Positions 951 to 50,436 of a stretch of DNA of 64,000 nt are shown in pieces. The notes under the pieces were generated by a model. The model searched no databases. It saw only the letters and a program-made list of their open reading frames with translations, and was not told where the DNA came from. Source of the stretch: Macrostomum hystrix (lineage: Eukaryota > Animalia > Platyhelminthes); contig CATNEN010000026.1 in assembly GCA_950097015.1 (NCBI GenBank), forward strand, positions 1,302,001 through 1,366,000. Direction: 5' to 3'. Made by a program: the position numbers and the translations under genes. Numbering within the stretch: the stretch's first letter is position 1; each line of letters starts with the position of its first letter.

Positions 951-1228
951 GCCTGCGTACTCAAGGCTCTCGGCCAGGTGGACACCAACCTGGAGTCGGA
1001 CTATCGCGCCCGCATACTGGCTCGCCAGGAGGGCCGTCGCTACCATGACGCCCAGCAGTACGCTTATCACAGCGGCGAGTCCATGCCAGCCCAGCTGCGC
1101 AAATCTCTCGGCCAGCCATCTCTGTTCAGCTTGGCTGTGTACTCGGAGTATGCCGACAATGTACCCGGATTTGCGTCTCCTGCCCCGCCGGCTGCCACTG
1201 CCGTCTCGTCAGTTGCTGTTCAACCTCC

Positions 1229-1261
<33 letters not shown>

Positions 1262-2209
1262 GGTCATTCAGCAGCCGCAGCCGCCAAGAAACGAAGCCGC
1301 CCAACTATTTGACACCATCGCCTCAGAGGTTGAACGCCAGTCGCAGTACATCGCCAATTCGCCGTCGAATTCAACGGACAGCGTCCAGCTGGTTCAACGG
1401 CTTCGCGTCCTAGTAGAGCGCGCCCAGGTTGCTAAGCAGAACCCTGGCAACGATGCCTGCGTCAGCGAGATGGTCAAAGCTGCCGTTGTGTCGCTATTTC
1501 AAACATTCAAGCGCCAAGCCCTGCAGTCACTGTACCCCAGGGAAGTGCTGGAAAGGTACAAAGATGCTCACACTGTTGTGCTCAGGCTCATGTATCAGCC
1601 CAAGATTAGCGGCCTAGGCTACTCTAGCTGCATGAGTCACGTGGTTACTCAGATCTGGACAGAGATGAACGAAACTCACAAATGGAATAGCGATGCGTTT
1701 ATAGAATTATTGAAGATACACATAGTTAGCCTGCATTCGTTGGATTCACACCTGGCTAGACAGATTCGTGCTAACAATCTGCGAGCTGTACGCTTTGTAT
1801 TAGATCTATTTCACGCGCTTGTACTGTGCGACAATCGAGAACAGACTGTTCTCAATGAATGCGATCTAACTGGCACTATAGCTGTGCTCAGTCATTGGGT
1901 TGAGAAGTCTCCGGCTGGTCAGGCTCCAGACGATTGCGCCAGGGTTTGTCGCCGAATGCGCAGTCTGTTAGACTTTGGCCTACTGGAACAGCATCAGGTG
2001 CCGGCTACGGTGTACCTGTACAGCGGCTGCTCTCAGGCCAGGGAGTTCGACGATCCGCCATGGCTGCAGAAGACTAGCGAAGATCTCATGAAGAACTGGT
2101 ACTCTCTGTACAGCAGCACCCAGAGAATGGTTGATCAGCAGAGTTTCAACGGATTTGTTAAAGAGATGACTAAACTGGGCATTCTCAAGACTGACGACCT
2201 GATTACAAG
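951..2209 (+). CDS. CNOT1: CNOT1 exon (ACVLKALGQVDTNLESDYRARILARQEGRRY...LKTDDLITR), includes Q10 tract
   Basis: Acceptor CCACTCAG|GCC, phase 0. Donor ACAAG|GTAAGC, phase 2. Motifs ARQEGRRY and LKTDDLITR are as in CNOT1. Confidence 0.93.
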
Positions 2210-2324
2210 GTAAGCTTGCTGACTGTCAATTGTATCATATACTGTATAGTATAGTGTATAGAGGTAGCAGAGATAAGATTATTACAGCTAACAGGCATAT
2301 GTATGTTACAGATAGCACAAACAC

Positions 2325-2620
2325 AGGTATTTTACAGGTAGCACACTGGTATGCTATAGGTAGCACGCACAGGTGCATTACAGGTAGCACGCACAGGTAT
2401 ATTACAGGTAGCACACAAGGGTATATTACAGGTAGCACACACATGTATATTACTGGTAGCACGCACAGGTGTATTACAGGTAGCACGCACAGGTATATTA
2501 CAGGTAGCACGCACAGGTGTATTACAGGTAGCACGCACAGGTATATTACAGGTAGCACGCACAGGTGTATTACAGGTAGCATGCACAGGTGTATTACAGG
2601 TAGCACGCACAGGTGTATTA
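2325..2620. repeat. 24-bp minisatellite (ATTACAGGTAGCACGCACAGGTRT) in CNOT1 intron
   Basis: Direct inspection. Confidence 0.9.
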
Positions 2621-2668
2621 CGGATATCACATACAGGCATATTTCCCATCGATTGCGTCACTATTCAG

Positions 2669-3122
2669 ATTCTTTCGCCTAACAACCGATTACGTCATGG
2701 AGCACTGCTTCCGCGCCCTGCTCAAATCTGGCCAAGAGGTGCTCAGCAATCGAATCAGCTGCTACCAAGAGCTAGACGCTTACATTCGCCTGATCGCTGT
2801 CATGGTGAAGCACAGCGGAGAGCAGGCAGGAGAGGCGCAGCGCGAAGCCGCAGCCAATACCAAGCTAAACCTGCTCAACAAGATCCTCGGCATCATCGCC
2901 GGCACGCTGCTGCAGGAGCAGGATATTCGGTCCGACCGGTTTCACCCGATGCCGTTTCAACGCATCTTTGTACTATTGTTCTCCGAGCTGCTCTGCCCGA
3001 TGGAAGCCGACGGGCCCGTGTCGCCAGCGCTGGCTAGCCTGACAGACCAGATGCTGGTTGCATTCGCCAACGCCCTGCATATTGTTCGGCCAACCAAGGT
3101 TCCCGCCTTCAGCTATAGCTGG
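2669..3122 (+). CDS. CNOT1: CNOT1 exon, Not1 C-terminal domain (FFRL..LDAYIRLIAVMVKHSG..TKLNLLNKILGI..PAFSYSW)
   Basis: Acceptor TATTCAG|A completes the Arg codon. Donor TGG|GTGAGA. Strong CNOT1 motifs. Confidence 0.95.
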
Positions 3123-3171
3123 GTGAGAGCTGGCTGTGTCCCCGCTGCGTGTCATGAAAACCTACAGCCTG

Positions 3172-3450
3172 CCCGGAATCCTCTGCTTACCCTGAATCCT
3201 CTGCTTACCCTGAATCCCCACTGCCTACTCTGAATCCTCTGCTTACCCTGAATCCTCTGCTTACCCTGAATCCTCTGCTTACCCTGAATCCTCTGCTTAC
3301 CCTGAATCCACACTGCCTACTCTAGATCCCCACTGCCTACTCTAAATCCCCATTGCCTACTCTAGATCCCCATTGCCTACTCTGAATCCCAATTGCCTAC
3401 CCTGAATCCCACTGCCTACTCTTGATCCCCACTACCTGACCTGAATCCCA
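3172..3450. repeat. 18-20-bp minisatellite (GAATCCTCTGCTTACCCT and variants) in CNOT1 intron
   Basis: Direct inspection. Confidence 0.85.
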
Positions 3451-3492
3451 CTGGCATAGCTACAACAGCGCCAATCCCGCTACCATTTGCAG

Positions 3493-4352
3493 CTGGAGTG
3501 CATCTGTCACCGCTCTGTGCTGTCCAAGTTTCTGGGCACCCCAACCGCCTGGCCCATGTACGCCCAGCTGCTGGTCGACCTGCTGAAGTTCATCTCGCCT
3601 TTCCTGGCCACAGCCAACTTCATCAAGACTGTACAGGCTCTGTACAAAGGCACCCTTCGTCTGATCCTAGTTCTGCTGCACGACTTTCCCGATTTTGTCA
3701 GCGAATTTCATCACGCCCTGTGTGACGTCATACCTGCCAACTGCATCCAGCTGCGCAATCTAATCTTGTCTGCCTTTCCCAAGTCTGTTCAACTATTGGA
3801 CCCGATCCAGAGTCCAACAGCTCAGTGCTACGCCCTGCCAGAGATGCAGCAGGAGCCCAAAGGCTCATTCGCCAGCTTGGAGTCCAGCATTCCCAGCGAA
3901 TTGCGCCAGGAGGTTGACAGCTTCCTGGCCACTAGGAAGCCGGTGCTGTTCCTCACGGACCTGCAGAGCCGCATTCGCTATCAGCAGCAGCCTGACGATA
4001 TCGACGGTCACGCCTGTCTGGCCGTTGATTCAGACCAGTTGTCGCCGTCTGGTCCTCCGCGCTACAACACCGAGCTAGTCAACGCCCTGGTGCTGTACAT
4101 CGGTCGACGGGCTGTTAAACGAATCAACGAGAGTGGCAACTCTCTGCAGCCCTACAATATGACACACTGCGTTGCTACGGAGACTCTGCAGGCCCTAGTG
4201 ATGTTCTGCTGCACCGAGGGTCGCTACCTGCTGCTTAACGCCATGGCTAATCAGCTGCGCTATCCTAATTCGCACACCTTCTTTTTCAATCAGATTCTGC
4301 TGTTCTTCTTCCGGGAGAGCAATAATGAGCAGATCAAAGAGCAGATTACCAG
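3493..4352 (+). CDS. CNOT1: CNOT1 exon (WPMYAQLLVDL..YKGTLRLILVLLHDFPDF..ANQLRYPNSHT..IKEQITR)
   Basis: Acceptor TTTGCAG|CTG. Donor ACCAG|GTATTA, phase 2. Near-diagnostic Not1 motifs. Confidence 0.96.
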
Positions 4353-4419
4353 GTATTAACATTCTTGGTTTTTTATCTAGGATTCTCGCATGAGATTTGA
4401 GACACAAGGTTTATTGGAG

Positions 4420-6535
4420 TTCTTGCTTTGGATTCTTGGGTGTTTTCGTTTCTAATCGTGATTGGGATTTCTGGGTTCTTAATTGTGTTTCCTTGGATTC
4501 TTGATTTGGGATTCCTGGGATCTTGATTTGGACTCCTGGGTTCTTGATTGGGATTCCCTGGTTCTTGATTGGGATTCCCTGGTTCTTGATTGGGATTTCT
4601 GGGTTCTTAATTGTGTTTACTTGGATTCTTGATTGGGATTCCTGGGATCTTGATTTGGACTCCTGGGTTCTTGATTGGGATTCCCTGGTTCTTGATTGGG
4701 ATTCCCTGGTTCTTAAATGGGATTCCTGGGTTCTTGATTAGGATTCCTGGCTACTTGATTTGGACTCCTGGGTTCTTGATTGGGATTCCTGGGTTCTTGA
4801 TTGGGATTCCTGGGTTCTTGATTGGGATTCCTGGGTTCTTGATTGGGATTCCTGGGTTCTGGATTAGGATTCCTGGGTTCTTGATTGGGATTCCTGGGTT
4901 CTTGATTTGGACTCCTGGGTTCTTGATTGGGATTCCCTGGTTATTGATTGGGATTCCCTGGTTCTTAAATGGGATTCCTGGGTTCTTGATTGGGATTTCT
5001 GGGTTCTTAATTGTGTTTACTTGGATTCTTGATTGGGATTCCTGGGATCTTGATTTGGACTCCTGGGTTCTTGATTGGGATTCCCTGGTTCTTGATTGGG
5101 ATTCCCTGGTTCTTAAATGGGATTCCTGGGTTCTTGATTAGGATTCCTGGCTTCTTGATTTGGACTCCTGGGTTCTTGATTGGGATTCCTGGGTTCTTGA
5201 TTGGGATTCCTGGGTTCTTGATTGGGATTCCTGGGTTCTGGATTAGGATTCCTGGGTTCTTGATTGGGATTCCTGGGTTCTTGATTGGGATTCCTGGGTT
5301 CTTGATTGGGATTCCTGGGTTCTTGATAACGATTCCCTGGTTCTTGATTAGGATTCCCTGGTTCTTGATTAGGATTCCCTGGTTCTTGATTGGGACTTCC
5401 AGATTCTTGATTGGGATTCCTGCGTTCCTAAATGGTATTCCTGGGTTCTTGATTAGGATTCTCCGATTCTTGATTAGGATTCTCCGATTCTTGATTGGGA
5501 TTTTCAGGTTCTTCATTGGGATTTTCAGGTTCTTAATTGGGTTTTTCAGGTTCTTCATTGGGATTCCTGGGTTTTTGATTGGGATTCCTGGGTTCTTAAT
5601 TGGATTCTTTGATTCTTGATTGGGATTCTTTGATTCTTGATTGGGATTCTTTGATTCTTGATTGGGATTCCTGGGTTTTTGATTGGGATTCCTGGGTTCT
5701 TAATTGGATTCTTTGATTCTTGATTGGGATTCTTTGATTCTTGATTGGGATTCTTTGATTCTTAATTGGGATTCTTTGATTCTTGATTGGGATTCTTTGA
5801 TTCTTGATTGGGATTCTTTGATTCTTAATTGGGATTCTTTGATTCTTAATTGGGATTCTTTGATTCTTGATTGGGATTCTTTGATTCTTAATTGGGATTC
5901 TTTGATTCTTGATTGGGATTCTTTGATTCTTGATTGGGATTCCTGGGTTCTTGATTGGGATTCTTTGATTCTTGATTGGGATTCCTGGGTTCTTGATTGG
6001 GATTCTTTGATTCTTAATTGGGATTCTTTGATTCTTAATTGGGATTCTTTGATTCTTGATTGGGATTCTTTGATTCTTAATTGGGATTCTTTGATTCTTA
6101 ATTGGGATTCTTTGATTCTTGATTGGGATTCTTTGATTCTTGATTGGGATTCTTTGATTCTTGATTGGGATTCTTTGATTCTTGATTGGGATTCCTGGGT
6201 TTTTGATTGGGATTCCTGGGTTCTTAATTGGATTCTTTGATTCTTGATTGGGATTCTTTGATTCTTGATTGGGATTCTTTGATTCTTAATTGGGATTCTT
6301 TGATTCTTGATTGGGATTCTTTGATTCTTGATTGGGATTCTTTGATTCTTAATTGGGATTCTTTGATTCTTAATTGGGATTCTTTGATTCTTGATTGGGA
6401 TTCTTTGATTCTTAATTGGGATTCTTTGATTCTTGATTGGGATTCTTTGATTCTTGATTGGGATTCCTGGGTTCTTGATTGGGATTCTTTGATTCTTGAT
6501 TGGGATTCCATGAGATTCTTGAATGGGATTCTTTG
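4420..6535. repeat. Composite 20-21-bp array (TTCTTGATTGGGATTC core) with higher-order duplications
   Basis: Direct inspection. Source of spurious ORFs. Confidence 0.92.
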
Positions 6536-6748
6536 AGTCATTGATTTACAATTTTTATAATCAGACGGAGAACAGTTTATTATAATATAACTTGATTCTT
6601 GATTGCTTTTTTGGGCTTTTAACCTTCAAATTAAGAATACTTGACCTGCACTTTATAAAATATTGTATTCTCGTAATTACAAATTTAGTCTCGGCTTTTT
6701 ATGGCTGAAATACAAAAAATGTGCTCAAATACAACTTAATTCACCCAG

Positions 6749-6883
6749 GGTTCTGCTAGAACGCCTAATCGTTCTCCGCCCGCACCCCTGGGGCCTGCTG
6801 CTGACCTTCACCGAGTTGCTGAAGAATCCCAGCTACCGGTTCTGGGACCACGAGTTCGTGCGCTTCTCGCCTCAGATTGAGAA
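6749..6883 (+). CDS. CNOT1: CNOT1 exon (VLLERLIVLRPHPWGLLLTFTELLKNPSYRFWDHEFVRFSPQIE)
   Basis: Acceptor CACCCAG|G. Donor GAGAA|GTGAGT. Contains the RPHPWGLL motif. Confidence 0.96.
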
Positions 6884-6999
6884 GTGAGTCTGTGAAACTG
6901 CAACTGGCCTCAGTTTACTCTCCGCGGTTTCGCCTTGGCTCCATCATTTTTATTCAATTCACACTTAATTCAACAAAATTAAGGCTGATCTTAGCCAGA

Positions 7000-7750
7000 A
7001 CTATGCTAATCCGATCATGAACCACGCTAATCCCCCCATAATCCAATCCTGAACTATGCTAATCCGATCATGAACCACGCTAATCCCTTCTTAATAAACC
7101 AGTCTAATCCGATCCTAATTAATCTATGCTAATCCCAACATAAGCCAAGCAAATCCGATCCTAAATTATGCAAATCCGATCCTAAACTATGCAAATCCGA
7201 TCCTAAACTATGCAAATCCGATCCTAAACTATGCAAATCCGATCCTATACTATGCAAATCCGATCCTAAACTATGCAAATCCGATCCTAAATTATGCAAA
7301 TCCGATCCTAAACTATGCAAATCCGATCCTATACTATGCAAATCCGATCCTATACTATGCAAATCCGATCCTAAACTATGCAAATCCGATCCTAAACTAT
7401 GCAAATCCGATCCTATACTATGCAAATCCGATCCTATACTATGCAAATCCGATCCTAAACTATGCAAATCCGATCCTAAACTATGCAAATCCGATCCTAA
7501 ACTATGCAAATCCGATCCTAAACTATGCAAATCCGATCCTATACTATGCTAATCCGATAATTAACTATGCTAATCCGATAATTAACTATGCTAATCCGAT
7601 AATTAACTATGCTAATCCGATCCTAAATTATGCTAATCCGTGCCTTAACTATCCTAATCCATTCAAAGGCAAGCTAATCCTATCCTGAAGCATGCTAATT
7701 TAGGAATAAGGATTTAGGATTAATTTAGGATTAAACTATGCTAATCCGAT
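7000..7750. repeat. 21-bp minisatellite (CTATGCAAATCCGATCCTAAA) in last CNOT1 intron
   Basis: Direct inspection. Confidence 0.92.
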
Positions 7751-7845
7751 CCTGACCCGCAGTACTGATCAGCTGTAATCAAACAGTAATATAGCCTCAT
7801 ATCTGATTACCTGATGATTATAATCTAAATCTCTCACCTGCCCAG

Positions 7846-8005
7846 GGTGTTGGAGTCTGTGGCCAGATCCTGTGTGCCCGGCTTCCGCATGCCACCTCCG
7901 CCGCAGCCGTTTATGCAGCATCAGCAGCAGCAGCAGCAGCAGCAGATTGAAGATGTGGCGAACGGACTGCAGATTGGCTCGTCCAATTCTTCAGTGGCCC
8001 TCTAA
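7846..8005 (+). CDS. CNOT1: CNOT1 last coding exon (KVLESVARSCVPGF..Q8..SVAL*)
   Basis: Acceptor TGCCCAG|G restores the frame. Aligns with the KLFQSVAQCC-type terminus. Stop TAA at 8003-8005, followed by U-rich sequence. Confidence 0.85.
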
Positions 8006-9129
8006 ACTTCTGACCGGTAAAAAATGCCTTTTAAAAAGGTCTGTCCTATGAGGGCTGACAAGTGACAGCAGTGTTTTTAAAACTACCCTTTGGTGATTGG
8101 GTCATCTGTGTGACATTTTATTTGTCTGCCATTATCTTACGCTTATCTAGCTACCTACTAAGTAGTATATAGCGACCACTTTCTCTTTTTTTCGCGCCTG
8201 CTCTCCTGTGAACTGGTTTAGTGCAATGTGTTGTTCATTCGACTATAATCCAATATTGCCTGTTTAGATATTGGACTAATGCTCTGAAATTGGCTTCATT
8301 GTTTATTAACTGTTGTTTGCTCTTTTCTGTATTGTTGCTGCCTTTCTGTAATCCTCCGGTACGTGTGTTAATTAACAATAACTGGCTTGCTTAGAATCTC
8401 TAAAATGCCATTTTCATGTTCAGAGACATTACAGATTCGCAGCACGTAACCTTTGTGGCTGTTTAATGCTTTTGTTTACTATTTATGACGACCAAAGACA
8501 AAGCTTGATTGCTCTCCCTGCACAAAATCTACCTAAAGACGTACTATTGACAGTTAACTGCGTTTAGAATATATGAATTTATATTCCTGTCATTCTACTT
8601 TTCCCAGTTGCTAGTTGCAAAATCGAACTGACTTTTTTTCAGTGTCACCTGTGAAATTGCTCCAAACCGAACATATATCTATCAAATCTTGTTGTGTATT
8701 TATTTTGCGTGTATCCAGTGCAGTTTGCATCCTCACAGTCCAGATTGCATAATCACCTGTTCGATGCTTTTTCCTGTGTTTTTTCTTCTCTTTCAAATTG
8801 TTTTCCAATTTTTTTTCCGTAGCTGTAACTCGCAGTTCCTACTGAGCTGTTAGTCAGTAGTATTTAGTGAGCGAGTTTTTTCCAGTTTGTATAAGTGTAT
8901 TTGTGCGCGCCCAGAAATCACAGTTCTCTTTCGCTGTTTAAAGTACCCTGAACTCTGAATTTATTATCCTATTTAGCCTGCGAGTGATTATATAATAATA
9001 CATTAGTGCTTGTGTGTTTTCCGCTTTGTTCGCCAGTTTGGTCTTAAAATCCCGTTCAAATTATGCGCAGCAATTTTTTTGTATTTGTGCTTTTGTACTT
9101 CTTAAATACCTCAATTCCTCATGAAATTC

Positions 9130-15817: not shown

Positions 15818-16180
15818 CAGAGTGACAGGCAGTACACAGGAGAGTGACAGGCAGTACACAGGAGAGTGACAGGCAGTGCAATGGAGAGTGACAGGCAGTG
15901 CACAGGAGAGTGACAGGCAGAGTACTGGAGAGTGACAGGCAGTGCACAGGAGAGTGACAGGCAGGGCACTGGAGAGTGACAGGCATTGCACTGGAGAGTG
16001 ACAGTCTGTGCAATAGAGAGTGACAGGCAGTGTACTGGAGAGTGACAGGCAGTGCACAGGAGAGTGACAGGCAGTGTACTGGAGAGTGACAGGCAGTGCA
16101 CAGGAGAGTGACAGGCAGTGTACTGGAGAGTGACAGGCAGTGCACAGGAGAGTGACAGGCAGTGCAATGGAGAGTGACAG
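15818..16180. repeat. ~22-bp minisatellite (GAGAGTGACAGGCAGTGCACAG)
   Basis: Direct inspection. Confidence 0.9.
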
Positions 16181-16698
16181 CAGCTGAAGCGAGCAGTTGG
16201 GATGGACAAGAAAAAATATTTTTTCTAAGAGACAAACAATGGGTCCGCAATTAGCGAGGCCTAACAAAACTCCCTGGAACTAAGCTGGCCAACCGAGTGG
16301 AACGCGGCGTGGCCCTCCGTCCGTCTGAAAAATCACTTATTTATGAGCTACGGCTGTGCGGCGCAGCTCATGTTTGAGCAGCATTGAGTTGCAGTTGACT
16401 CTGAGACAATCGCTAAGGAGGCTTCACTCTGTTGGGCAGTCGAAACAACGGGAAGACACTGAAGAATTGGCCTAGAACAATGGTAGACCATTGTGAACAG
16501 CTTGTCTGGTAGCGATAATTAGCTTAATGACTGTTTTTAATTGCTTCTCAATCTTATGAAATCCAAGTCTATAAATAACTCGCCATTGACTTTCACATTT
16601 TCGTTTCTAGAGACATCAGCCGTTTTGCGTTCTGATCTTTATTAACGTCAACGCGTGGAAAAAAATCGATCAGCCTAAGAATCGCAGGAAACTGGAGA

Positions 16699-16773
16699 AT
16701 GAGACTCTGCGCCAAACTGCTACTGTGCTGGGCTGCCTGCCTGCTCTGCTGGGCTGCTCCTGTCAGCCTGCGG
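16699..16773 (+). CDS. Neuropeptide precursor coding exon 1: signal peptide MRLCAKLLLCWAACLLCWAAPVSLR
   Basis: Upstream acceptor TTTTCGTTTCTAG| at 16609, ATG at 16699, basic-hydrophobic-small-residue pattern. Donor CGG|GTGAGT, phase 0. Confidence 0.8.
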
Positions 16774-16789
16774 GTGAGTGCGGAGGGCG

Positions 16790-18115
16790 CGAGTGGGGAG
16801 GAGAGGAGAAGGGAAAGGGAAAAGGGGAGAAGGATATGAGAAAAGGGAAAAGGGGGGAAGGATAGGAGAAAAGGGAAAGGGGAGAAGGATAAGAGAAAAG
16901 GGGAAAGGGGAGAAGTGTAGGAGAAAAGGGAAAAGGGAGAAGCATATGAGAAAAGGGGAAAGGGGAGAAGGATAGGAGAAAAGGGAAAGGGGAGAAGGAT
17001 AAGAGAAAAGGGGAAAGGGGAGAAGGATAGGAGAAAAGGGAAAGGGGAGAAGGATAAGAGAAAAGGGGAAAGGGGAGAAGTGTAGGAGAAAAGGGAAAGG
17101 GGAGAAGGATAGGAGAAAAGGGACAGGGGAGAAGGATAAGAGAAAAGGGGAAAGGGGAGAAGTGTAGGAGAAAAGGGAAAAGGGAGAAGCATATGAGAAA
17201 AGGGGAAAGGGGAGAAGGATAGGAGAAAAGGGAAAGGGGAGAAGGATAAGAGAAAAGGGGAAAGGGGAGAAGGATAGGAGAAAAGGGAAAGGGGAGAAGG
17301 ATAAGAGAAAAGGGGAAAGGGGAGAAGTGTAGGAGAAAAGGGAAAGGGGAGAAGGATAGGAGAAAAGGGAAAGGGGAGAAGGATAAGAGAAAAGGGGAAA
17401 GGGGAGAAGGATAGGAGAAAAGGGAAAGGGGAGAAGGATAGGAGAAAAGGGAAAGGGGAGAAGGATAGAGAAAAGGGAAAGGGGAGAAGGATAGGAGAAA
17501 AGGGGAAAGGGGAGAAGGATAGGAGAAAAGGGGAAAGGGGAGAAGGATATGAGAAAAGGGAAAGGGGAGAAGGATAGGAGACAGGGGAAAGGGAAGAAGG
17601 ATAGGAGAAAATGGAAAGGGGAGAAGGATAGGAGAAAAGGGAAAGGGGAGAAGGATAGGAGAAAAGGGAAAGGGGAGAAAGATAGGAGAAAAGGGAAAGG
17701 GGAGAAAGATAGGAGAAAAGGGAAAGGGGAGAAGGATAGGAGAAAATGGAAAGGGGAGAAGGATAGGAGAAAAGGGAAAGGGGAGAAGGATAGGAGAAAA
17801 GGGAAAGGGGAGAAGGATAGGAGAAAAGGGAAAGGGGAGAAGGATAGGAGAAAAGGGAAAGGGGAGAAAGATAGGAGAAAAGGGAAAGGGGAGAAAGATA
17901 GGAGAAAAGGGAAAGGGGAGAAAGATAGGAGAAAAGGGAAAGGGGAGAAGGATAGGAGAAAATGGAAAGGGGAGAAGGATAGGAGAAAAGGGAAAGGGGA
18001 GAAGGATAGGAGAAAAGGGTAGAAGAAAGGCGAAGAGGGGGATAAAAGGGGAAGAGGACAGAAGGAAAGGAGAAGGGGGACGAGAGTGAAGTGGAAGGGA
18101 ACGGTAAGTAGGAGA
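16790..18115. repeat. Polypurine array (~27-28 bp, GGGGAGAAGGATAGGAGAAAAGGGAAA)
   Basis: Direct inspection. Source of the spurious F/P/L/S-rich minus-strand ORFs. Confidence 0.92.
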
Positions 18116-18549
18116 GGAATATAAACAAGAAAAATAGTCAAGAGTCAAGAGCCAAGGGCAGGGAGAATCAAACACTCGCGAGCGGTGACGCCAGGGTGCC
18201 GAGTGTGAGCGAGCAAGCGCCAAAGGTTTCTAACAGAGGAGTAAATAGATCCAGTGTCAGCCAGGCCTGTCTGTAATTTCTTATATCAATAAATCTCTAT
18301 AGTAAGAAGGACGCTAATTAATTGGCCTCTATCTAGGCCAGGATTCGCCTGTGTGTGATTAACCTTTTATTGAGAAATCCCCACTAGAACCAAGGTATCC
18401 CATTTCGCCAAGGTGGACATCATAACTCGTGTGTCTAATAAGAGGTTGGCCTATCAATGATACTTTTTCTATGAAACCTGAGGGATTATGATCCCAGAGA
18501 GCCGTAGGACTTCAAAGAAAGATAACAGAAAACTGTTCGACTTAAAATC

Positions 18550-20915
18550 CCAAAGAAGGATTATAGAGGCTAGGACGATTTGGATCCCAAAGAAGAATTA
18601 CGGAGGCTAGGAGGATTAGGATCCCAAAGAAGGATTATGAAAACTTGGAGGATTAGGATCCCAAAGAAGGATTATAGAAACTAGGAGGATTAGGATCCCA
18701 AAGAAGGATTATGGAAACTATTGGGATTAGGATCCCAAAGAAGGATTATAGAAACTATTGGGATTAGGATCCCAAAGAAGGATTATGAAAACTTGGATAA
18801 TTAGGATCCCAAAGAAGGATTATGCAAACTAGGAGGATTAGAATCCCAAAGAAGGATTATGAAAACTAGGAGGATTAGGATCCCAAAGAAGAATTACGGA
18901 ATCTAGGAGGATTAGGATCCCAAAGAAGGATTATGAAAACTAGGAGGATTAGGATCCCAAAGAAGGATTACGGAGGCTAGGAGGATTAGGATCCCAAAGA
19001 AGGATTATGGAATCTAGGAGGATTAGGATCCCAAAGAAGGATTACGGAGGCTAGGAGGATTAGGATCCCAAAGAAGGATTATGGAATCTAGGAGGATTAG
19101 GATCCCAAAGAAGGATTATGAAAACTTGGAGGATTAGGATCCCAAAGAAGGATTATGGAAAATTGGAGAATTAGGATCCCAAAGAAGGATTATGGAAACT
19201 TGGAGGATTAGGATCCCAAAGAAGGATTATGGAAACTAGGAGGATTAGGATCCCAAAGAAGGATTATAGAAACTAGGAGGATTAGGATCCCAAAGAAGGA
19301 TTATAGAAACTAGGAGGATTAGGATCCCAAAGAAGGATTATGAAAACTTGGAGGATTAGGATCCCAAAGAAGGATTATGAAAACTTGGAGGATTTGGATC
19401 CCAAAGAAGAATTATGAAAACTTGGAGGATTAGGATCCCAAAGAAGGATTATGCAAACTAGGAGGATTAGAATCCCAAAGAAGGATTATGAAAACTTGGA
19501 GGATTAGGATCCCAAAGAAGGATTATAGAAACTAGGAGGATTAGGATCCCAAATAAGGATTATGGAAACTAGGAGGATTAGGATCCCAAATAAGGATTAT
19601 GAAAACTTGGAGGATTAGGATCCCACAGAAGAATTCTAGAAAACTAGGAGGATTAGGATCCCAAATAAGGATTATGGAAACTAGGAGGATTAGGATCCCA
19701 AAGAAGGATTATGGAAACTTGGAGGATTAGGATCCCAAATAAGGATTATGGAAACTAGGAGGATTAGGATCCCAAAGAAGGATTATGGAAACTAGGAGGA
19801 TTAGGATCCCAAAGAAGGATTATGGAAACTAGGAGGATTAGAATCCCAAATAAGGATTATGAAAACTTGGAGGATTAGGATCCCACAGAAGAATTCTAGA
19901 AACTAGGAGGATTAGGATCCCAAATAAGGATTATGGAAACTAGGAGGATTAGGATCCCAAAGAAGGATTATGCAAACTAGGAGGATTAGAATCCCAAATA
20001 AGGATTATGAAAACTTGGAGGATTAGGATCCCACAGAAGAATTCTAGAAACTAGGAGGATTAGGATCCCAAATAAGGATTATGGAAACTAGGAGGATTAG
20101 GATCCCAAATAAGGATTATGGAAACTTGGAGGATTAGGATCCCAAATAAGGATTATGGAAACTAGGAGGATTAGGATCCCAAAGAAGGATTATGGAAACT
20201 AGGAGGATTAGGATCCCAAAGAAGGATTATGGAAACTTGGAGGATTAGGATCCCAAATAAGGATTATGGAAACTAGGAGGATTAGGATCCCAAAGAAGGA
20301 TTATGGAAACTAGGAGGATTAGGATCCCACAGAAGAATTCTAGAAACTAGGAGGATTAGGATCCCAAAGAAGGATTATGAAAACTTGGAGGATTAGGATC
20401 CCAAAGAAGGATTATGGAAACTTGGAGGATTAGGATCCCACAGAAGAATTCTAGAAACTAGGAGGATTAGGATCCCAAAGAAGGATTATGGAAACTCGGA
20501 GGATTAGAATCCCAAAGAAGGATTATGGAAACTCGGAGGATTAGGATCCCACAGAAGGATTATGGAAACTAGGAGGATTAGGATCCCACAGAAGGATTAT
20601 AGAAACTAGGAGGATTAGGATCCCAAAGAAGGATTATGGAAACTATTGGGATTAGGATCCTAAAGAAGGATTATGCAAACTAGGAGGATTAGAATCCCAA
20701 AGAAGGATTATGAAAACTATTGGGATTAGGATCCTAAAGAAGGATTATGCAAACTAGGAGGATTAGAATCCCAAAGAAGGATTATGAAAACTATTGGGAT
20801 TAGGATCCCAAAGAAGGATTATGAAAACTATTGGGATTAGGATCCCAAAGAAGGTTTATGAAAACTTGGATGATTAGAATCCCAAAGAAGGATTATGGAA
20901 AACTGAAGGGATTAG
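18550..20915. repeat. 38-39-bp minisatellite (AGGATTATGGAAACTAGGAGGATTAGGATCCCAAAGA)
   Basis: Direct inspection, about 60 units. Confidence 0.92.
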
Positions 20916-21454
20916 GATCGCAGATTTCTGAAATACATGTTTTCAGAAGTCTCGAAGTTTAGTCCTATTATAGAATGTTTAAAATTTCACCAGCCGTATA
21001 TATATTTTCTTGCACCCCACAAACTCTAGCAGTTCTAGAAAATCAATAATCCTAAATCCCAATATTGGAAAATCATTAGACCGTGCAGATCTGACCCGCA
21101 ATTATTTGTATCACACATTGGCAAAGCCCAGTTTGCATTCCCTTCTCAGCCCCCGCCTCAGTTCTCACGAGTTGTCAGTCCCAGTTGTGGCCTCTGGCCA
21201 ACCGAAGGTCGAAATTCAAGAGTCGAAGCATCCATGCCCAAACCTACTTCCCATCTTTCATGATCCCAATGCACTTTCACTTATCTTGTTCGCCGAGCTG
21301 ATAGTAGGAGTATCATCAAATTAAGACATAGTACCGGGTCTGCCGGTATACTAAACTAAATTCTAAATTCATTTATTTAGGAGAGAAACTCAATTCTCCA
21401 CGAGCTCTAAACTTTGAGATTCATTATCCGACTCCCACATTTTCCCTTTGGCAG

Positions 21455-22144
21455 AAACTCGAAGAAGCTAACTCGGAAAATCGGATCGATCGCCGTTTCG
21501 ACCCGCTGATCATGAAGCGATTCGACCCGCTGATCATGAAGCGATTCGACCCTCTGATCATGAAGCGATTCGACCCTCTGATCATGAAGCGATTTGACCC
21601 TCTGATCATGAAGCGATTTGACCCTCTGATCATGAAGCGATTCGACCCTCTGATCATGAAGCGATTCGACCCTCTGATCATGAAGCGATTTGACCCTCTG
21701 ATCATGAAGCGATTTGACCCTCTGATCATGAAGCGATTCGACCCGCTGATCATGAAGCGATTCGACCCTCTGATCATGAAGCGATTCGACCCTCTGATCA
21801 TGAAGCGATTTGACCCTCTGATCATGAAGCGATTTGACCCTCTGATCATGAAGCGATTTGACCCTCTGATCATGAAGCGATTCGACCCTCTGATCATGAA
21901 GCGATTTGACCCTCTGATCATGAAGCGATTTGACCCTCTGATCATGAAGCGATTTGACCCTCTGATCATGAAGCGATTCGACCCTCTGATCATGAAGCGA
22001 TTCGACCCTCTGATCATGAAGCGATTTGACCCTCTGATCATGAAGCGATTCGACCCTCTGATCATGAAGCGATTCGACCCGCTGATCATGAAGCGATTCG
22101 ACCCTCTGATCATGAAGCGATTCGACAGCTCAAAGGATGACTAA
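21455..22144 (+). CDS. Neuropeptide precursor coding exon 2: KLEEANSENRIDRR-(FDPLIM-KR)x26-FDSSKDD*
   Basis: Strong acceptor CATTTTCCCTTTGGCAG|AAA, phase 0. Dibasic sites flank every copy. Variation between 24-bp units is synonymous (TTC/TTT, CCG/CCT). AATAAA at 22328-22333. Confidence 0.88.
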   Translation, partial: KLEEANSENRIDRRFDPLIMKRFDPLIMKRFDPLIMKRFDPLIMKRFDPLIMKRFDPLIMKRFDPLIMKRFDPLIMKRFDPLIMKRFDPLIMKRFDPLIMKRFDPLIMKRFDPLIMKRFDPLIMKRFDPLIMKRFDPLIMKRFDPLIMKRFDPLIMKRFDPLIMKRFDPLIMKRFDPLIMKRFDPLIMKRFDPLIMKRFDPLIMKRFDPLIMKRFDPLIMKRFDSSKDD

Positions 22145-22429
22145 AACACAATTTCCGAAATCCGAAATCACCGCAATATCGTTTAAGAATGTCTTGATCT
22201 TCAGTTAATCTATCAGTCGGTGATGCAATTTAACCTTTAATATACTTTTAATGAGATTTTATTTCCATTTTTGTGAAAGAAAACTTGTTGTTCCCGACAT
22301 TATTACCAACCTTGATAACTGGAAGCAAATAAACGGCTTGAAAAGCTGGCAGAAAATGTTCTCAGAACTAACCTAGCTGGTTGCAACAAAACCCAAGGAA
22401 ATTAAACGTCATAATTTCGGATATTTAAA

Positions 22430-23470
22430 ACCACTGAATCCTATTTTGGGGTAGTTGATGCTACAGAATCTAATTTAGGGATATTTTGATTTTCAGAATC
22501 CCATTTTAGGATAATCGAAACTACATAATCCTATCTTAGGACAATTGACAATACAGAATCCCATTTCGGCATAACTGATACTACAGAATCCCATTTCGGC
22601 ATAATTTATACTACAGAATCCCATTTCGGCATAATTTATACTACAGAATCCCATTTCGGCATAATTTATACTACAGAATCCCATTTCGGCATAATTGATA
22701 CTACAGAATCCCATTTCGGCATAATTGATACTACAGAATCCCATTTCGGCATGATTGATACTACAGAATCCCATTTCGGCATAATTGATACTACAGAATC
22801 CCATTTTGGGATAATTGATACTACAGAATCCCATTTCGGCATGATTGATACTACAGAATCCCATTTCGGCATAATTTATACTACAGAATCCCATTTCGGC
22901 ATGATTGATACTACAGAATCCCATTTCGGCATAATTGATACTACAGAATCCCATTTCGGCATAATTTATACTACAGAATCCCATTTCGGCATAATTGATA
23001 CTACAGAATCCCATTTCGGCATGATTGATACTACAGAATCCCATTTCGGCAAATTTGATACTGCAGAATCCCATTTCGGCATAATTGATACTACAGAATC
23101 CCATTTTGGGATGATTGATACTGCAGAATCCCATTTCGGCATAATTGATACTGCAGAATCCCATTTTGGCATAATTGATACTGCAGAATCCCATTTTGGG
23201 ATGATTGATACTGCAGAATCCCATTTCGGCATAATTGATACTGCAGAATCCCATTTTGGGATGATTGATACTGCAGAATCCCATTTTGTGATAATTGATA
23301 CTGCAGAATCCCATTTCGGCATAATTGATACTGCAGAATCCCATTTCGGGATAATTGATACTACAGAATCCCATTGCGGCATATTTGATACTGCAGAATC
23401 CCATTTTGGGATAATTGATACTGCAGAATCCCATTTCGGGATAATTGATAGTACTGATTCCAATTTCGGA
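22430..23470. repeat. 30-bp minisatellite (CAGAATCCCATTTCGGCATAATTGATACTA)
   Basis: Direct inspection. Confidence 0.92.
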
Positions 23471-25795: not shown

Positions 25796-25829
25796 CCAAC
25801 AAATCTCACTATAGTTGCCATGCTCTCAC

Positions 25830-26584
25830 CTGGGCATCTTGAGCAGGAAGAAGCATGTGTAGGCCTCGGGCAGGAAATTGTCTGGCGGCGAGTACTTGTC
25901 CAGGATCTGGATGACAAAGTCTCGGCCGCGCATGTCGGCCATGGAGCGGGGCAGTCTGGCCCGACCCCAGACAAAGCGAAGGAACAAAGACCTCTCCGCG
26001 TTGGAGAATTCCTCCATGACCTCCCAGAACCAGCGGACAAGGGGGCTGGAAGGTTCGACACCTTTGTAGGTGGCGATAGATTTCAATAGGCCGACTGGAA
26101 TGTCAGGATTGCCGCACACAATGGATTCCAGTTGTTGACTGGTGAACAGGGACAAGTAGGGCAGCGGCACAACGAGACTGAGGCCGGCTCGGACATGGGC
26201 CACTGCAGCGTCGAATTCCTTCAGTCGATGCTGAACAGCCAGGCGCAGATAATCCCCCCGATTGCTGGGACTAATCGTGCCCCCGGATGCGCCCAGTGAG
26301 GCGAGGGGCACGGGTTCGCCGCCTGTTATGCTGGCAACTGCAAACGGCAAGTCGGCTAAGGCCAGGGCCGGGTCGTCCATTGTTCGGATGGCCATTAGAG
26401 AGGCCAGAGTGTCCTTGTCCAGATCGCTGAGATCGTCCAGTGCTAGAGGCTCGCCTGAGAATAGCTTCCACATTGCGTCGTGCAGGCTGAGATTCAACGG
26501 GCTGCCAGTCCGAATGGCAACGCCCAGGAGGCTGCCGGCGAAGCGAAGCCACTTGGGCTTGCTGACCGAATGAGGGTTTAACAC
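25830..26584 (-). CDS. HERC2: HERC2 exon, HECT with catalytic Cys ([15 protein letters not shown])
   Basis: Acceptor CCTCCGCAG|GTG. Donor AG|GTGAGA, phase 2. HECT motifs are present. Confidence 0.96.
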
Positions 26585-26649
26585 CTGCGGAGGACAGGCA
26601 GAATGATTGCTCATTTGTTTGACTTGAAGTCTAACTTAACGAAGCCTCA

Positions 26650-28700: not shown

Positions 28701-28761
28701 AATATGACGGGAATCAAACCTCCGACCTTTCAAGTCTAGAATCCGACGCTCTCAAACTCAC

Positions 28762-29348
28762 CTGTAAATTAATAAGTGGCGCAGTGTAGCAGAGCAGCTC
28801 GGAGAAGAAATTCAGCATGACCAGCCGATCTCGCAGCAGCGAAGTAGGCAGGCTGTGCAGAGCAGTGTACTCAACTGGCACCGAGCTGGGCAGTCGGCCA
28901 ACTGTTGATAGGCCGCCATCGGTGCCAGTCTTCTGCGTGCTCCAGGCCAGAGTGTGAGCAGAGCCGCAGGCCACTTGGTTGATCATTTTGCCCTGCAAGG
29001 CGGCTACAAGGCGAGGCCGGCCAACGGAGGTTGTTGTCGAATCACCCAACTGGCCCTCGTCATTGTCGCCCCAGGTGTAGACCTCGCCTTCGGCCGTGCA
29101 GGCTACGCAGTGTAGGGAGCCGCAGCAGACGGCGACAACGCGTTTACCCTCGAGGCTGGCAACAACCTTCGGCCGGCGAACGTGCTCGGGCGGGTCCTGG
29201 GACACGTGACCCAACCGGTGATAATCGCCTTTGCCCCAGGTGTAGACTAGGCCGGAGGCGGACAGGGCCACGGAGAACTGGGAGCCGCATTCCACTTTGA
29301 TGATGTCTTTGCCGGTTAGGGAATCGATCTTCATGGGGATTCTGCAGC
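28762..29348 (-). CDS. HERC2: HERC2 exon, RCC1-like domain 3
   Basis: RCC1 repeats ([25 protein letters not shown]). Acceptor CCACAG|GC. Donor CAG|GTGAGT. Confidence 0.95.
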
Positions 29349-49369: not shown

Positions 49370-50400
49370 GTTTCAGAGAGGTGGCTTTCGTAATAAGTGG
49401 GCCTTCCGTCAAAATGGGATTTTCGGAAATTAAGGAGGTTCGGAAAAAAGAAGTTTGAGTAAAATAAAGTTTCGGAAAATTGGGAAGTTTGGGGAAATGG
49501 GGAGTTTTAGAAAACTATGTTCCAAATTAGGAAAATGGGGAGCTTTGAAAAATGGAGAGTTTTGGAAAATGGATAGTTTTGGAAAATGGAGAGTTTTGGA
49601 AAATGGAGAGTTTTGGAAAATGGGGAGCTTTGAAAAATGGGGAGTTTTGGAAAATGGGGAGTTTTGGAAAATGGGGAGTTTTGGAAAATGGAGAGTTTTG
49701 GAAAATGGGGAGCTTTGAAAAATGGGGAGTTTTGGAAAATGGGAAGTTTTGGAAAATGGGAAGTTTTGGAAAATGGGGAGTTTTGGAAAATGGGGAGTTT
49801 TGGAAAATGGGGAGCTTTGAAAAATGGAGAGTTTTGGAAAATGGGGAGTTTTGGAAAATGGGGAGCTTTGAAAAATGGGGAGTTTTGGAAAATGGGAAGT
49901 TTTGGAAAATGGGGAGTTTTGGAAAATGGGAAGTTTTGGAAAATGGAGAGTTTTGAAAAATGGAGAGTTTTGGAAAATGGGGAGTTTTGGAAAATGGGGA
50001 GCTTTGAAAAATGGGGAGTTTTGGAAAATGGGAAGTTTTGGAAAATGGGAAGTTTTGGAAAATGGGGAGTTTTGGAAAATGGGGAGTTTTGGAAAATGGA
50101 GAGTTTTGGAAAATGGGGAGCTTTGAAAAATGGGGAGTTTTGGAAAATGGGAAGTTTTGGAAAATGGGGAGTTTTGGAAAATGGGGAGTTTTGGAAAATG
50201 GGAAGCTTTGAAAAATGGAGAGTTTTGGAAAATGGGGAGTTTTGGAAAATGGGGAGCTTTGAAAAATGGGGAGTTTTGGAAAATGGGGAGTTCTGGAAAA
50301 TAGGAACTTTGCGAAAAAGGGGAGTTACAAAAATAAGGCGTTTCGGAAAATTGGGAGTTTTGAAAGAAAGTGGAGTTTCTTGGAATGTGAATTTTCGAGT
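49370..50400. repeat. ~17-bp array (TTTTGGAAAATGGGGAG)
   Basis: Direct inspection. Causes the spurious read-through tail of the 1053-aa ORF. Confidence 0.9.
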
Positions 50401-50436
50401 GAAAACAATGATTGTGAGCACTGGCTGTAAGCTCAC

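What the first reader, a model, noticed from the sequence alone, without database searches (positions are those of the whole stretch)
16610..22333. Hidden neuropeptide precursor: 26 x FDPLIM disguised as a tandem repeat
Seen in the sequence: a 25-codon signal-peptide exon (16699-16773, phase-0 GTGAGT donor) joins a phase-0 acceptor at 21455. This gives a 254-aa precursor, MRLCAKLLLCWAACLLCWAAPVSLR|KLEEANSENRIDRR-(FDPLIM-KR)x26-FDSSKDD*, followed by AATAAA. Established: signal peptide, acidic spacer and multi-copy peptides between KR/RR prohormone-convertase sites define a neuropeptide precursor. There is no Gly before KR, so the hexapeptide should be non-amidated. Inference: the FDP start recalls, from memory and unverified, planarian FDPIxF-type (SPP-15-like) peptides and pedal-peptide/orcokinin-type peptides. 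A non-amidated FDPLIM at this copy number may be a new family member. Repeat masking would erase this gene from an automated annotation.
Basis: partly seen in the sequence, partly recalled or inferred. Interest (0 to 1): 0.88.

Follow-up and report, generated by a model that had tools for sequence, protein, structure and literature searches.

The report
Flatworm multi-copy FDPLIM peptide precursor gene
A 24-base tandem repeat is the main exon of a real, spliced and transcribed flatworm (Macrostomum) gene whose secreted precursor should be cut into 26 identical FDPLIM peptides, most likely a relative of a neuropeptide family already known from planarians and schistosomes.

Summary
Exon 1 (16699-16773) encodes a signal peptide and ends at a GTGAGT donor. 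Exon 2 (21455-22144) encodes a spacer, 26 x FDPLIM-KR and FDSSKDD-stop. AATAAA lies at 22328. Contigs from two sequencing runs read from 16773 straight into the sequence of 21455, so the 4,681-nt intron is removed. A DNA run stays unspliced.

The organism is a Macrostomum flatworm. In M. lignano, a two-exon gene sits in the same orientation downstream of CNOT1 and has a phase-0 intron after the signal peptide. It encodes 16 x FDPLMM between KK/KR and is filed as 'hypothetical protein' with only 5 copies in its model.

Within both arrays, every variant in the peptide codons is synonymous. Between the species, the peptide and the dibasic sites are kept while the spacers are unalignable. That is the usual signature of a prohormone.

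Planarian Smed-spp-15 has 8 x FDPIQFG-KR plus FDPIMFG and is expressed in the nervous system. Schistosome npp-26 gives non-amidated xFDPILF/IIY peptides confirmed by mass spectrometry. Both share the FDP core and the precursor architecture.

Homology with that family is plausible but cannot be shown by sequence statistics. Verdict: a new member of a known kind, of moderate interest. Neuronal expression and the mature peptide remain untested. The scan also noted an FDPLMM gene elsewhere in this genome.

The parts
16570..16577 (+). TATAAATA, a TATA-box-like motif 33-40 nt upstream of the 5' end of the RNA contig
   Evidence: Promoter function is inferred.
16610..16773 (+). Exon 1: 5' UTR 16610-16698 and CDS 16699-16773, giving the 25-aa signal peptide MRLCAKLLLCWAACLLCWAAPVSLR
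   Evidence: The X1 contig covers 16610-16773. The UTR has no upstream ATG. An acceptor-like tttctag at 16604-16610 leaves spliced-leader trans-splicing open.
16774..21454 (+). Phase-0 intron of 4,681 nt, GTGAGT...GGCAG, inflated by two satellite arrays: 16814-18028 (27-mer) and 18547-20919 (37-mer)
   Evidence: Its removal is shown by the loose ends at 16773.
21455..21496 (+). N-terminal spacer KLEEANSENRIDRR, ending in an RR cleavage site
21497..22120 (+). 26 x 24-nt units, each encoding FDPLIM-KR. There are three unit variants, all synonymous, in the order AABBCCBBCCABBCCCBCCCBBCBAB.
22121..22144 (+). C-terminal peptide FDSSKDD plus the stop codon
22145..22381 (+). 3' UTR with AATAAA at 22328-22333. 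The exact poly(A) site was not determined.
   Evidence: An X6 contig runs 255 nt past the last repeat.
7847..8005 (+). Context: last coding exon of CNOT1 (...LESVARSCVPGFR...). The same upstream neighbour is found at the M. lignano locus.
25826..26611 (-). Context: HECT-domain exon at the 3' end of a HERC2-like gene that converges on the peptide gene

Best explanation
This is a two-exon gene of a Macrostomum flatworm that encodes a 254-aa preprohormone. The gene model and the splice are shown; the processing steps below are inferred. Exon 1 supplies a signal peptide that sends the protein into the secretory pathway. Prohormone convertase (PC2-type) would cut after each KR or RR, and a carboxypeptidase would trim the basic residues. 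That releases 26 identical non-amidated hexapeptides FDPLIM-OH (MH+ 735.3746), an acidic N-terminal spacer peptide and FDSSKDD. The peptide most likely acts as a neuropeptide through an unknown receptor. The gene is most likely the macrostomid representative of the flatworm FDP-peptide prohormones, Smed-spp-15 and Sma/Sja-npp-26. The array grew by unequal crossing-over of one- and two-unit blocks, and purifying selection keeps the peptide and its dibasic sites unchanged.
For: The splice 16773|21455 is shown by contigs and the unspliced form by a DNA run. Repeat unitigs and a repeat-to-3'UTR contig are present in X6.

The M. lignano gene at the matching position is PAA57848.1 at L001 8001-8872. 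It has the same layout: a signal-peptide exon, a phase-0 intron, then an acidic spacer plus 16 x FDPLMM-(KK/KR). It lies downstream of CNOT1 on the same strand. A second M. lignano protein carries FDPLIM itself.

All four variable sites within the peptide codons of the two arrays are synonymous. About 20% and 17% of random single-base changes would be synonymous there, giving a joint chance of about 0.001. Spacer codons vary only between K and R. Spacers, tails, the intron and flanks are not alignable between the species, while the repeat is about 79% identical.

From the literature, Smed-spp-15 consists of a signal peptide, a spacer, KR, 8 x FDPIQFG-KR and FDPIMFGR. Its peptides are confirmed by mass spectrometry, and it is expressed in cephalic ganglia, ventral nerve cords and pharynx. 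Sm-npp-26 peptides NFDPILF-OH, SYFDPILF-OH and others are non-amidated and confirmed by mass spectrometry. M. lignano has a neuronal pc2 homologue.

The nearest neighbours by ESM Atlas features are multi-copy neuropeptide precursors: MIP, tachykinin, allatostatin, FLP-1 and TRH. Scores are below 0.8, so this is only a weak lead.
Against: There is no tissue or cell-type expression data and no peptide detection for this gene. SignalP was not run.

Sequence searches link it only to M. lignano proteins, not to planarian or schistosome precursors.

Two residues differ from the family motif: Leu instead of Ile at position 4, and Met instead of Phe/Tyr at the C-terminus.

An unrelated-looking nematode precursor (C. 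angaria, P0031) also carries FDPxx peptides, so an FDP start can arise or persist elsewhere.

The library kind of the runs is guessed ('RNA?' for X1, '?' for X11 and X6).
Confidence: 0.75

Rival explanations
1. The gene is a real convertase-processed precursor, but it belongs to a Macrostomum-specific peptide family that resembles spp-15/npp-26 only by convergence. This rival concerns family membership, not the mechanism.
For: phmmer and word-based searches find only Macrostomum relatives. Positions 4 and 6 differ from FDPIx[F/Y]. A nematode FDPxx precursor shows that the FDP start is not unique to flatworms.
Against: The phylum is the same. The peptide length (6) is the same as the planarian peptide. 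FDP follows the KR site directly in both. Both have near-identical tandem copies after a short spacer. Schistosome npp-26 shares the non-amidated state. Short peptide families are routinely invisible to E-value statistics.
Confidence: 0.3
2. The precursor is made outside the nervous system, for example in gland, epidermal or reproductive cells. FDPLIM would then act as a pheromone, a seminal or adhesive-gland peptide, or a defence peptide rather than a neuropeptide.
For: There is no expression localisation. Earlier notes of this scan report many secreted peptide genes in this genome (unchecked). The high copy number suits bulk secretion.
Against: The peptide is a short, uncharged, hydrophobic hexapeptide, unlike cationic defence peptides. 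The closest known peptides (spp-15) are expressed in cephalic ganglia and nerve cords.
Confidence: 0.15
3. The array is an ordinary non-coding satellite with an accidentally open frame, and the gene model is an artefact.
For: The window is full of satellites. Two minus-strand frames of the array are also open.
Against: There is a spliced transcript with canonical GT-AG on the + strand. All variants are synonymous only in the + frame. A signal peptide, a stop codon and AATAAA are present. The peptide and dibasic sites are conserved in the M. lignano gene at the matching position although the flanks are unalignable.
Confidence: 0.02

Closest known systems
Smed-spp-15 (secreted peptide prohormone-15, Schmidtea mediterranea; GenBank BK007013; Collins et al. 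2010, PMC2953531)
   Same: It is a flatworm gene. It has a signal peptide, a short spacer ending in a dibasic site, then tandem near-identical hexapeptides that begin FDP directly after KR, with a variant last copy. Residues 4-6 are hydrophobic.
   Different: The peptides are FDPIQF and FDPIMF with a C-terminal Gly, so they are amidated. There are 9 copies rather than 26. The C-terminus is aromatic rather than Met, and position 4 is Ile rather than Leu. No sequence-statistical link was found here.
Sma-/Sja-npp-26 (Smp_071050; Collins et al. 2010; PMC9495596)
   Same: It is a flatworm gene. Its peptides have an FDPI(L/I) core between KR sites and no Gly, so they are non-amidated -OH peptides, confirmed by LC-MS/MS. 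They are very hydrophobic.
   Different: The peptides are 7-8 residues long with 1-2 extra N-terminal residues and end in F or Y. The precursor holds only about 5 non-identical copies and has a longer N-terminal region.
Macrostomum lignano BOX15_Mlig023240g1 (PAA57848.1, 'hypothetical protein') and UniRef A0A1I8HH48
   Same: It has the same gene layout, the same CNOT1 neighbour and strand, and a phase-0 intron after the signal peptide. Its units are 24 nt long and about 79% identical. A0A1I8HH48 carries FDPLIM itself.
   Different: The peptide is FDPLMM, one ATC/ATG difference in every unit, between KK/KR sites. The genome holds 16 copies but the annotated model only 5. The intron is 320 nt rather than 4,681 nt. 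The spacer and tail are unrelated.
Classical multi-copy neuropeptide precursors (FMRFamide/FLP, TRH, allatostatin-A, MIP, tachykinin)
   Same: They share the working principle: many copies of one short peptide between dibasic sites behind a signal peptide. They are the nearest ESM Atlas feature neighbours.
   Different: There is no sequence relation. Most of those peptides are amidated.

Membership tests
Flatworm FDP-peptide prohormones (Smed-spp-15 / Sma-,Sja-npp-26) | Encoded in a platyhelminth genome | tested here: met
   The only sequence relatives are M. lignano proteins. The locus is syntenic with an M. lignano contig.
Flatworm FDP-peptide prohormones (Smed-spp-15 / Sma-,Sja-npp-26) | N-terminal signal peptide followed by a spacer that ends in a dibasic site | tested here: met
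   hydrophobic core and the spacer KLEEANSENRIDRR. SignalP itself was not available.
Flatworm FDP-peptide prohormones (Smed-spp-15 / Sma-,Sja-npp-26) | Several peptide copies with an F-D-P core, each bounded by KR/RR | tested here: met
   26 x KR-FDPLIM-KR. Compared.
Flatworm FDP-peptide prohormones (Smed-spp-15 / Sma-,Sja-npp-26) | Ile at position 4 and aromatic F/Y at the C-terminus (FDPIx[F/Y]) | tested here: not met
   The window has Leu at position 4 and Met at position 6. Both are conservative hydrophobic replacements, but the strict motif fails.
Flatworm FDP-peptide prohormones (Smed-spp-15 / Sma-,Sja-npp-26) | Statistically supported sequence homology of the precursors | tested here: inconclusive
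   No planarian or schistosome hit among the listed hits. This is expected for 6-aa peptides with fast-evolving spacers. A direct pairwise comparison was not run because the supplement text of the reference sequences is garbled by machine reading.
Flatworm FDP-peptide prohormones (Smed-spp-15 / Sma-,Sja-npp-26) | Expression in the nervous system and a mature peptide detected by mass spectrometry | not testable with these tools
   Only the presence of the transcript in whole-animal runs is shown.
Prohormone / neuropeptide precursor (general) | Peptide and cleavage sites conserved while spacers diverge | tested here: met
   Only synonymous variants occur in the peptide codons of both arrays. Dibasic sites vary only between K and R. 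Spacers and tails are unalignable between the species.
Prohormone / neuropeptide precursor (general) | Processing machinery present in the organism | not tested
   From the literature only: an M. lignano pc2 homologue has neuronal expression and a lethal RNAi phenotype (PMC4490696).
Pedal peptide / orcokinin | Peptides of roughly 13-20 residues with the family's extended motif (own knowledge) | tested here: not met
   The peptide has 6 residues. Planarians carry separate ppp-1,2 genes for this family. No hit supports the link.

The most novel reading that the evidence does not exclude
FDPL(I/M)M peptides form a separate, Macrostomum-specific signalling peptide family that evolves by whole-array concerted change. 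One ATC/ATG substitution was homogenised through 16-26 copies, switching the ligand between species or paralogues. The peptides may act outside the nervous system, for example in reproduction or social signalling of these hermaphrodites.
Probability: 0.2. Interest if true: 0.55.

Novelty: new member of a known kind. Interest (0 to 1): 0.42.

Why it matters
The gene gives Macrostomum, an early-branching and genetically tractable flatworm model, a high-confidence peptide signalling gene that current annotation truncates or mis-names.

If the link to spp-15/npp-26 holds, the FDP-peptide family dates back to the base of Rhabditophora. The non-amidated form seen in schistosomes would then not be a parasite novelty.

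The pair FDPLIM x26 and FDPLMM x16 at matching positions in two species shows concerted evolution of a ligand array.

It also shows that repeat masking and short-read assembly hide such genes. RNA contigs break inside the array, and the M. lignano gene model dropped 11 of 16 copies.

The planarian relative is reported to be needed for normal brain regeneration (bioRxiv 10.64898/2026.10.10.758126), which suggests a testable phenotype.

Tried and rejected
The two ends were laid separately instead, and the junction was read from loose ends.
- Full-text searches for FDPLIM, FDPLI, FDPLM, FDPIM and FDPLL found nothing relevant. A search for a Macrostomum neuropeptide catalogue found none that mentions this peptide. 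McVeigh et al. 2009 (PMC2749192) is not held.
- phmmer against 1.84 billion representatives gave 583 hits. Of the 150 listed, nearly all are unrelated proteins with an 8-residue period. Only P0001, P0069 and the nematode P0031 carry FDP peptides between dibasic sites.
- The Pfam hit CdrL_M (E 4.5e-18) rests on a 6-residue stretch summed over the repeats. It was rejected as a periodicity artefact.
- P0001 has no contig on record.
- blastn, tblastn and tblastx between the window and the M. lignano locus align only the repeat, the CNOT1 terminal exon and low-complexity satellites. HERC2 was not reached within the 8-kb downstream flank of L001.
- Structure prediction was not attempted because the product is a short-lived, repetitive and probably disordered precursor.
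- The reference precursors from the paper supplement were not typed into tools. The machine-read text is inconsistent with the listed peptides (FDPPIQF against FDPIQF).
Full report
**1. Observation**

- Window 16699-16773 translates to MRLCAKLLLCWAACLLCWAAPVSLR and is followed by GTGAGT.
- After ...TTTCCCTTTGGCAG, window 21455-22144 translates to KLEEANSENRIDRR, 26 x FDPLIMKR and FDSSKDD-stop.
- The joined CDS is 765 nt, or 254 aa. AATAAA lies at 22328-22333.
- Tandem Repeats Finder reports period 24, 26.4 copies and 97% matches.
- A degenerate codon pattern for FDPLIM matches 26 times, against none in 100 shuffles.
- The 26 units come in three DNA variants that differ only at two third-codon positions: TTC/TTT for Phe and CCG/CCT for Pro.
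- Their order, AABBCCBBCCABBCCCBCCCBBCBAB, points to growth by duplication of one- and two-unit blocks. Tandem Repeats Finder also scores periods 48 and 72 higher than 24.
- Two minus-strand frames of the array are open as well, but there the variants change amino acids.

**2. The gene is transcribed and spliced as predicted**

- On 16450-16812, a contig of run X1 (RNA?, organism A) covers 16610-16773. It then continues for 74 letters beginning AAACTCGAAGAAGCTAACTCGGAAAATCGG, which is the window sequence from 21455 onward.
- A contig of X11 (organism C, the species label of the probable source sample) does the same for 15 letters; the last letter differs from the window.
- The DNA run X7 reads straight through the donor into the intron.
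- All differences between these contigs and the window lie in the 5' UTR (16658-16682). None lie in the coding part of exon 1.
- On 21250-21700, run X6 (same study as X11) has deep repeat unitigs and no coverage of the intron. It also has a contig running from the repeat into AGCTCAAAGGATGACTAAAACACAATTTCC and 255 letters onward, which is the C-terminal tail and 3' UTR.
- The array itself is broken into 36-60-nt unitigs in every run. That is why no assembled transcript or protein of this gene exists in the protein databases.
- The 5' UTR has no upstream ATG. TATAAATA lies 33-40 nt upstream of 16610.
- The X1 contig has five unaligned letters at its 5' end, and the genome reads tttctag just before 16611. 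I therefore cannot exclude a spliced-leader acceptor instead of a transcription start.

**3. Organism and the matching gene in M. lignano**

The word-indexed protein search found one relative: M. lignano UniRef A0A1I8HH48, mis-named 'PSCyt2 domain-containing protein'. It carries FDPLIM between RKR/KR sites.

The exhaustive phmmer search returned 583 hits, of which the best 150 are listed. Nearly all of those are unrelated proteins with an 8-residue period. Filtering for FDP motifs between dibasic sites left three:
- the same M. lignano protein;
- M. lignano PAA57848.1 (BOX15_Mlig023240g1, 'hypothetical protein', 95 aa);
- one nematode protein.

The locus of PAA57848.1 (L001, contig NIVC01002440.1) shows the same gene layout.
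- Exon 1 (8001-8081) encodes MRHNSTCRIGLACLMAFLLCAGVTHCE and ends at a GTGCGT donor.
- A phase-0 intron of 320 nt follows.
- Exon 2 (8402-8872) encodes MPDSEDMEDDSRDEEKR, 16 x FDPLMM-(KK/KR) and RFLRKLHRLHE-stop.
- The deposited model keeps only 5 of the 16 copies.

The upstream gene in L001 is CNOT1 on the same strand. In the window, the CNOT1 connector/ARM domains are at 978-2210. Its last exon, with ...LESVARSCVPGFR... conserved in M. lignano, is at 7847-8005.

So the order CNOT1 then FDPLxM gene is conserved. The gap is 8.6 kb here and 5.8 kb in M. lignano. Outside the repeat (about 79% identity) and that exon, nothing aligns. The window therefore comes from a Macrostomum species other than the M. 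lignano reference. Two earlier follow-up notes of this scan also call the genome a Macrostomum.

**4. Signature of selection**
- In the window array, both variable sites in the peptide codons are synonymous. 11 of 54 possible single-base changes would be.
- In the M. lignano array, both variable sites in the peptide codons are also synonymous (9 of 54 possible).
- The joint chance is about 0.001 if the four events are independent.
- In the M. lignano array the only variation outside the peptide codons is K/R in the second basic residue; the window's spacer codons do not vary.
- Between the species, the peptide differs at one residue (ATC Ile against ATG Met in every unit). The dibasic sites are retained. 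The N-terminal spacers, C-terminal tails, intron and flanks are unrelated in sequence.
- Conservation of the peptide and its cleavage sites against free divergence of everything else is the classical prohormone pattern.

**5. Mechanism (inferred)**
- Signal-peptide cleavage happens in the ER.
- The protein is sorted to secretory granules.
- A PC2-type convertase cleaves after RR and KR, and a carboxypeptidase trims the basic residues.
- The products are 26 x FDPLIM-OH (MH+ 735.3746), an acidic spacer peptide and FDSSKDD.
- There is no Gly before the basic pair, so no amidation.
- M. lignano has a pc2 homologue with neuron-like expression and a lethal RNAi phenotype (PMC4490696).
- The receptor and the physiological role are unknown.

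**6. Comparison with what is known**

- Collins et al. 2010 (PMC2953531) list Smed-spp-15 with peptides FDPIQFamide (x8) and FDPIMFamide, confirmed by mass spectrometry. The prohormone consists of a signal peptide, a spacer, KR and the tandem copies.
- It is expressed in cephalic ganglia, ventral nerve cords, sub-epidermal cells and pharynx.
- Smed-spp-16 contains FDPIMY.
- Schistosome npp-26 (Smp_071050) yields TLFNPILF, NFDPILF, SYFDPIIY, SYFDPILF and EHFDPIIY. All are non-amidated and were confirmed by LC-MS/MS in cercariae (PMC9495596).
- A 2026 preprint reports that spp-15 RNAi impairs planarian brain regeneration.

The window gene shares the phylum, the FDP core directly after the cleavage site, the hexapeptide length (as in planarians), the hydrophobic C-terminal half, the non-amidated state (as in schistosomes) and the precursor architecture.

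It fails the strict motif at position 4 (Leu, not Ile) and at the C-terminus (Met, not Phe/Tyr). No sequence search connects the precursors. I put homology at about 0.6-0.7 and keep convergence as a rival.

Other comparisons add little:
- Nothing supports a pedal-peptide or orcokinin relation.
- Pfam gives only a periodicity artefact, CdrL_M, whose best stretch is 6 residues.
- ESM Atlas feature neighbours are multi-copy neuropeptide precursors at weak scores.

**7. Novelty and score**

I found no paper in the held library that mentions FDPLIM or FDPLMM. Supplements of papers not held could not be searched.

The family exists in public M. lignano protein sets, but unrecognised and truncated. 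This is a new member of a known kind: real and well supported, useful for flatworm neurobiology and for annotation practice, but not surprising to a specialist.

The open curiosity is which gene sits beside CNOT1. It is the FDPLIM type here and the FDPLMM type in M. lignano, while each species seems to have both types: P0001 in M. lignano, and the unverified scan note s1-258405 in this genome. This suggests either duplicated loci or homogenisation of a one-base change across an entire array.

Noticed in passing
L001:8001-8872 (M. lignano NIVC01002440.1): The deposited gene model BOX15_Mlig023240g1 gives 5 FDPLMM copies, but the genomic exon holds 16. The look-up tool flags that the locus does not translate to the deposited protein. 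Two other M. lignano entries for this family are mis-named: 'PSCyt2 domain-containing' and 'Mucin TcMUCII'.
   Followed up: yes
P0031 (Caenorhabditis angaria CAI5456649.1, 159 aa): An unannotated secreted nematode precursor with about 11 short FDPxx(x) peptides (FDPYA, FDPYT, FDPLS, FDPMFN and others) between KR/KK sites. It looks like an undescribed NLP-type gene. Any relation to the flatworm FDP peptides is unknown.
   Followed up: partly
window 16604-16611: There is an acceptor-like tttctag directly before the first base matched by the RNA contig, and that contig carries 5 unaligned letters at its 5' end. The cause could be spliced-leader trans-splicing or a TATA-driven start (TATAAATA at 16570-16577).
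   Followed up: partly
window 15819-16180, 16814-18028, 18547-20919, 22414-23469: The gene is embedded in four unrelated satellite arrays with 22-, 27-, 37- and 30-nt units. Two of them inflate the intron to 4,681 nt, against 320 nt in M. lignano. The M. lignano locus is also rich in satellites, but with different units.
   Followed up: partly
window 978-8005 (+) and 25826 to about 60000 (-): The flanking genes are CNOT1 upstream (NOT1 connector/ARM domains, terminal exon 7847-8005) and a HERC2-like gene converging from downstream (HECT at 25826-26611, RCC1 at 28714-29331, Cul7 domain at 49507-52665).
   Followed up: partly
runs X3, X4: Metatranscriptomes labelled 'outdoor' and 'salt marsh' hold a few words of the repeat region (share 0.03-0.05). 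This could come from environmental macrostomids or from chance.
   Followed up: no
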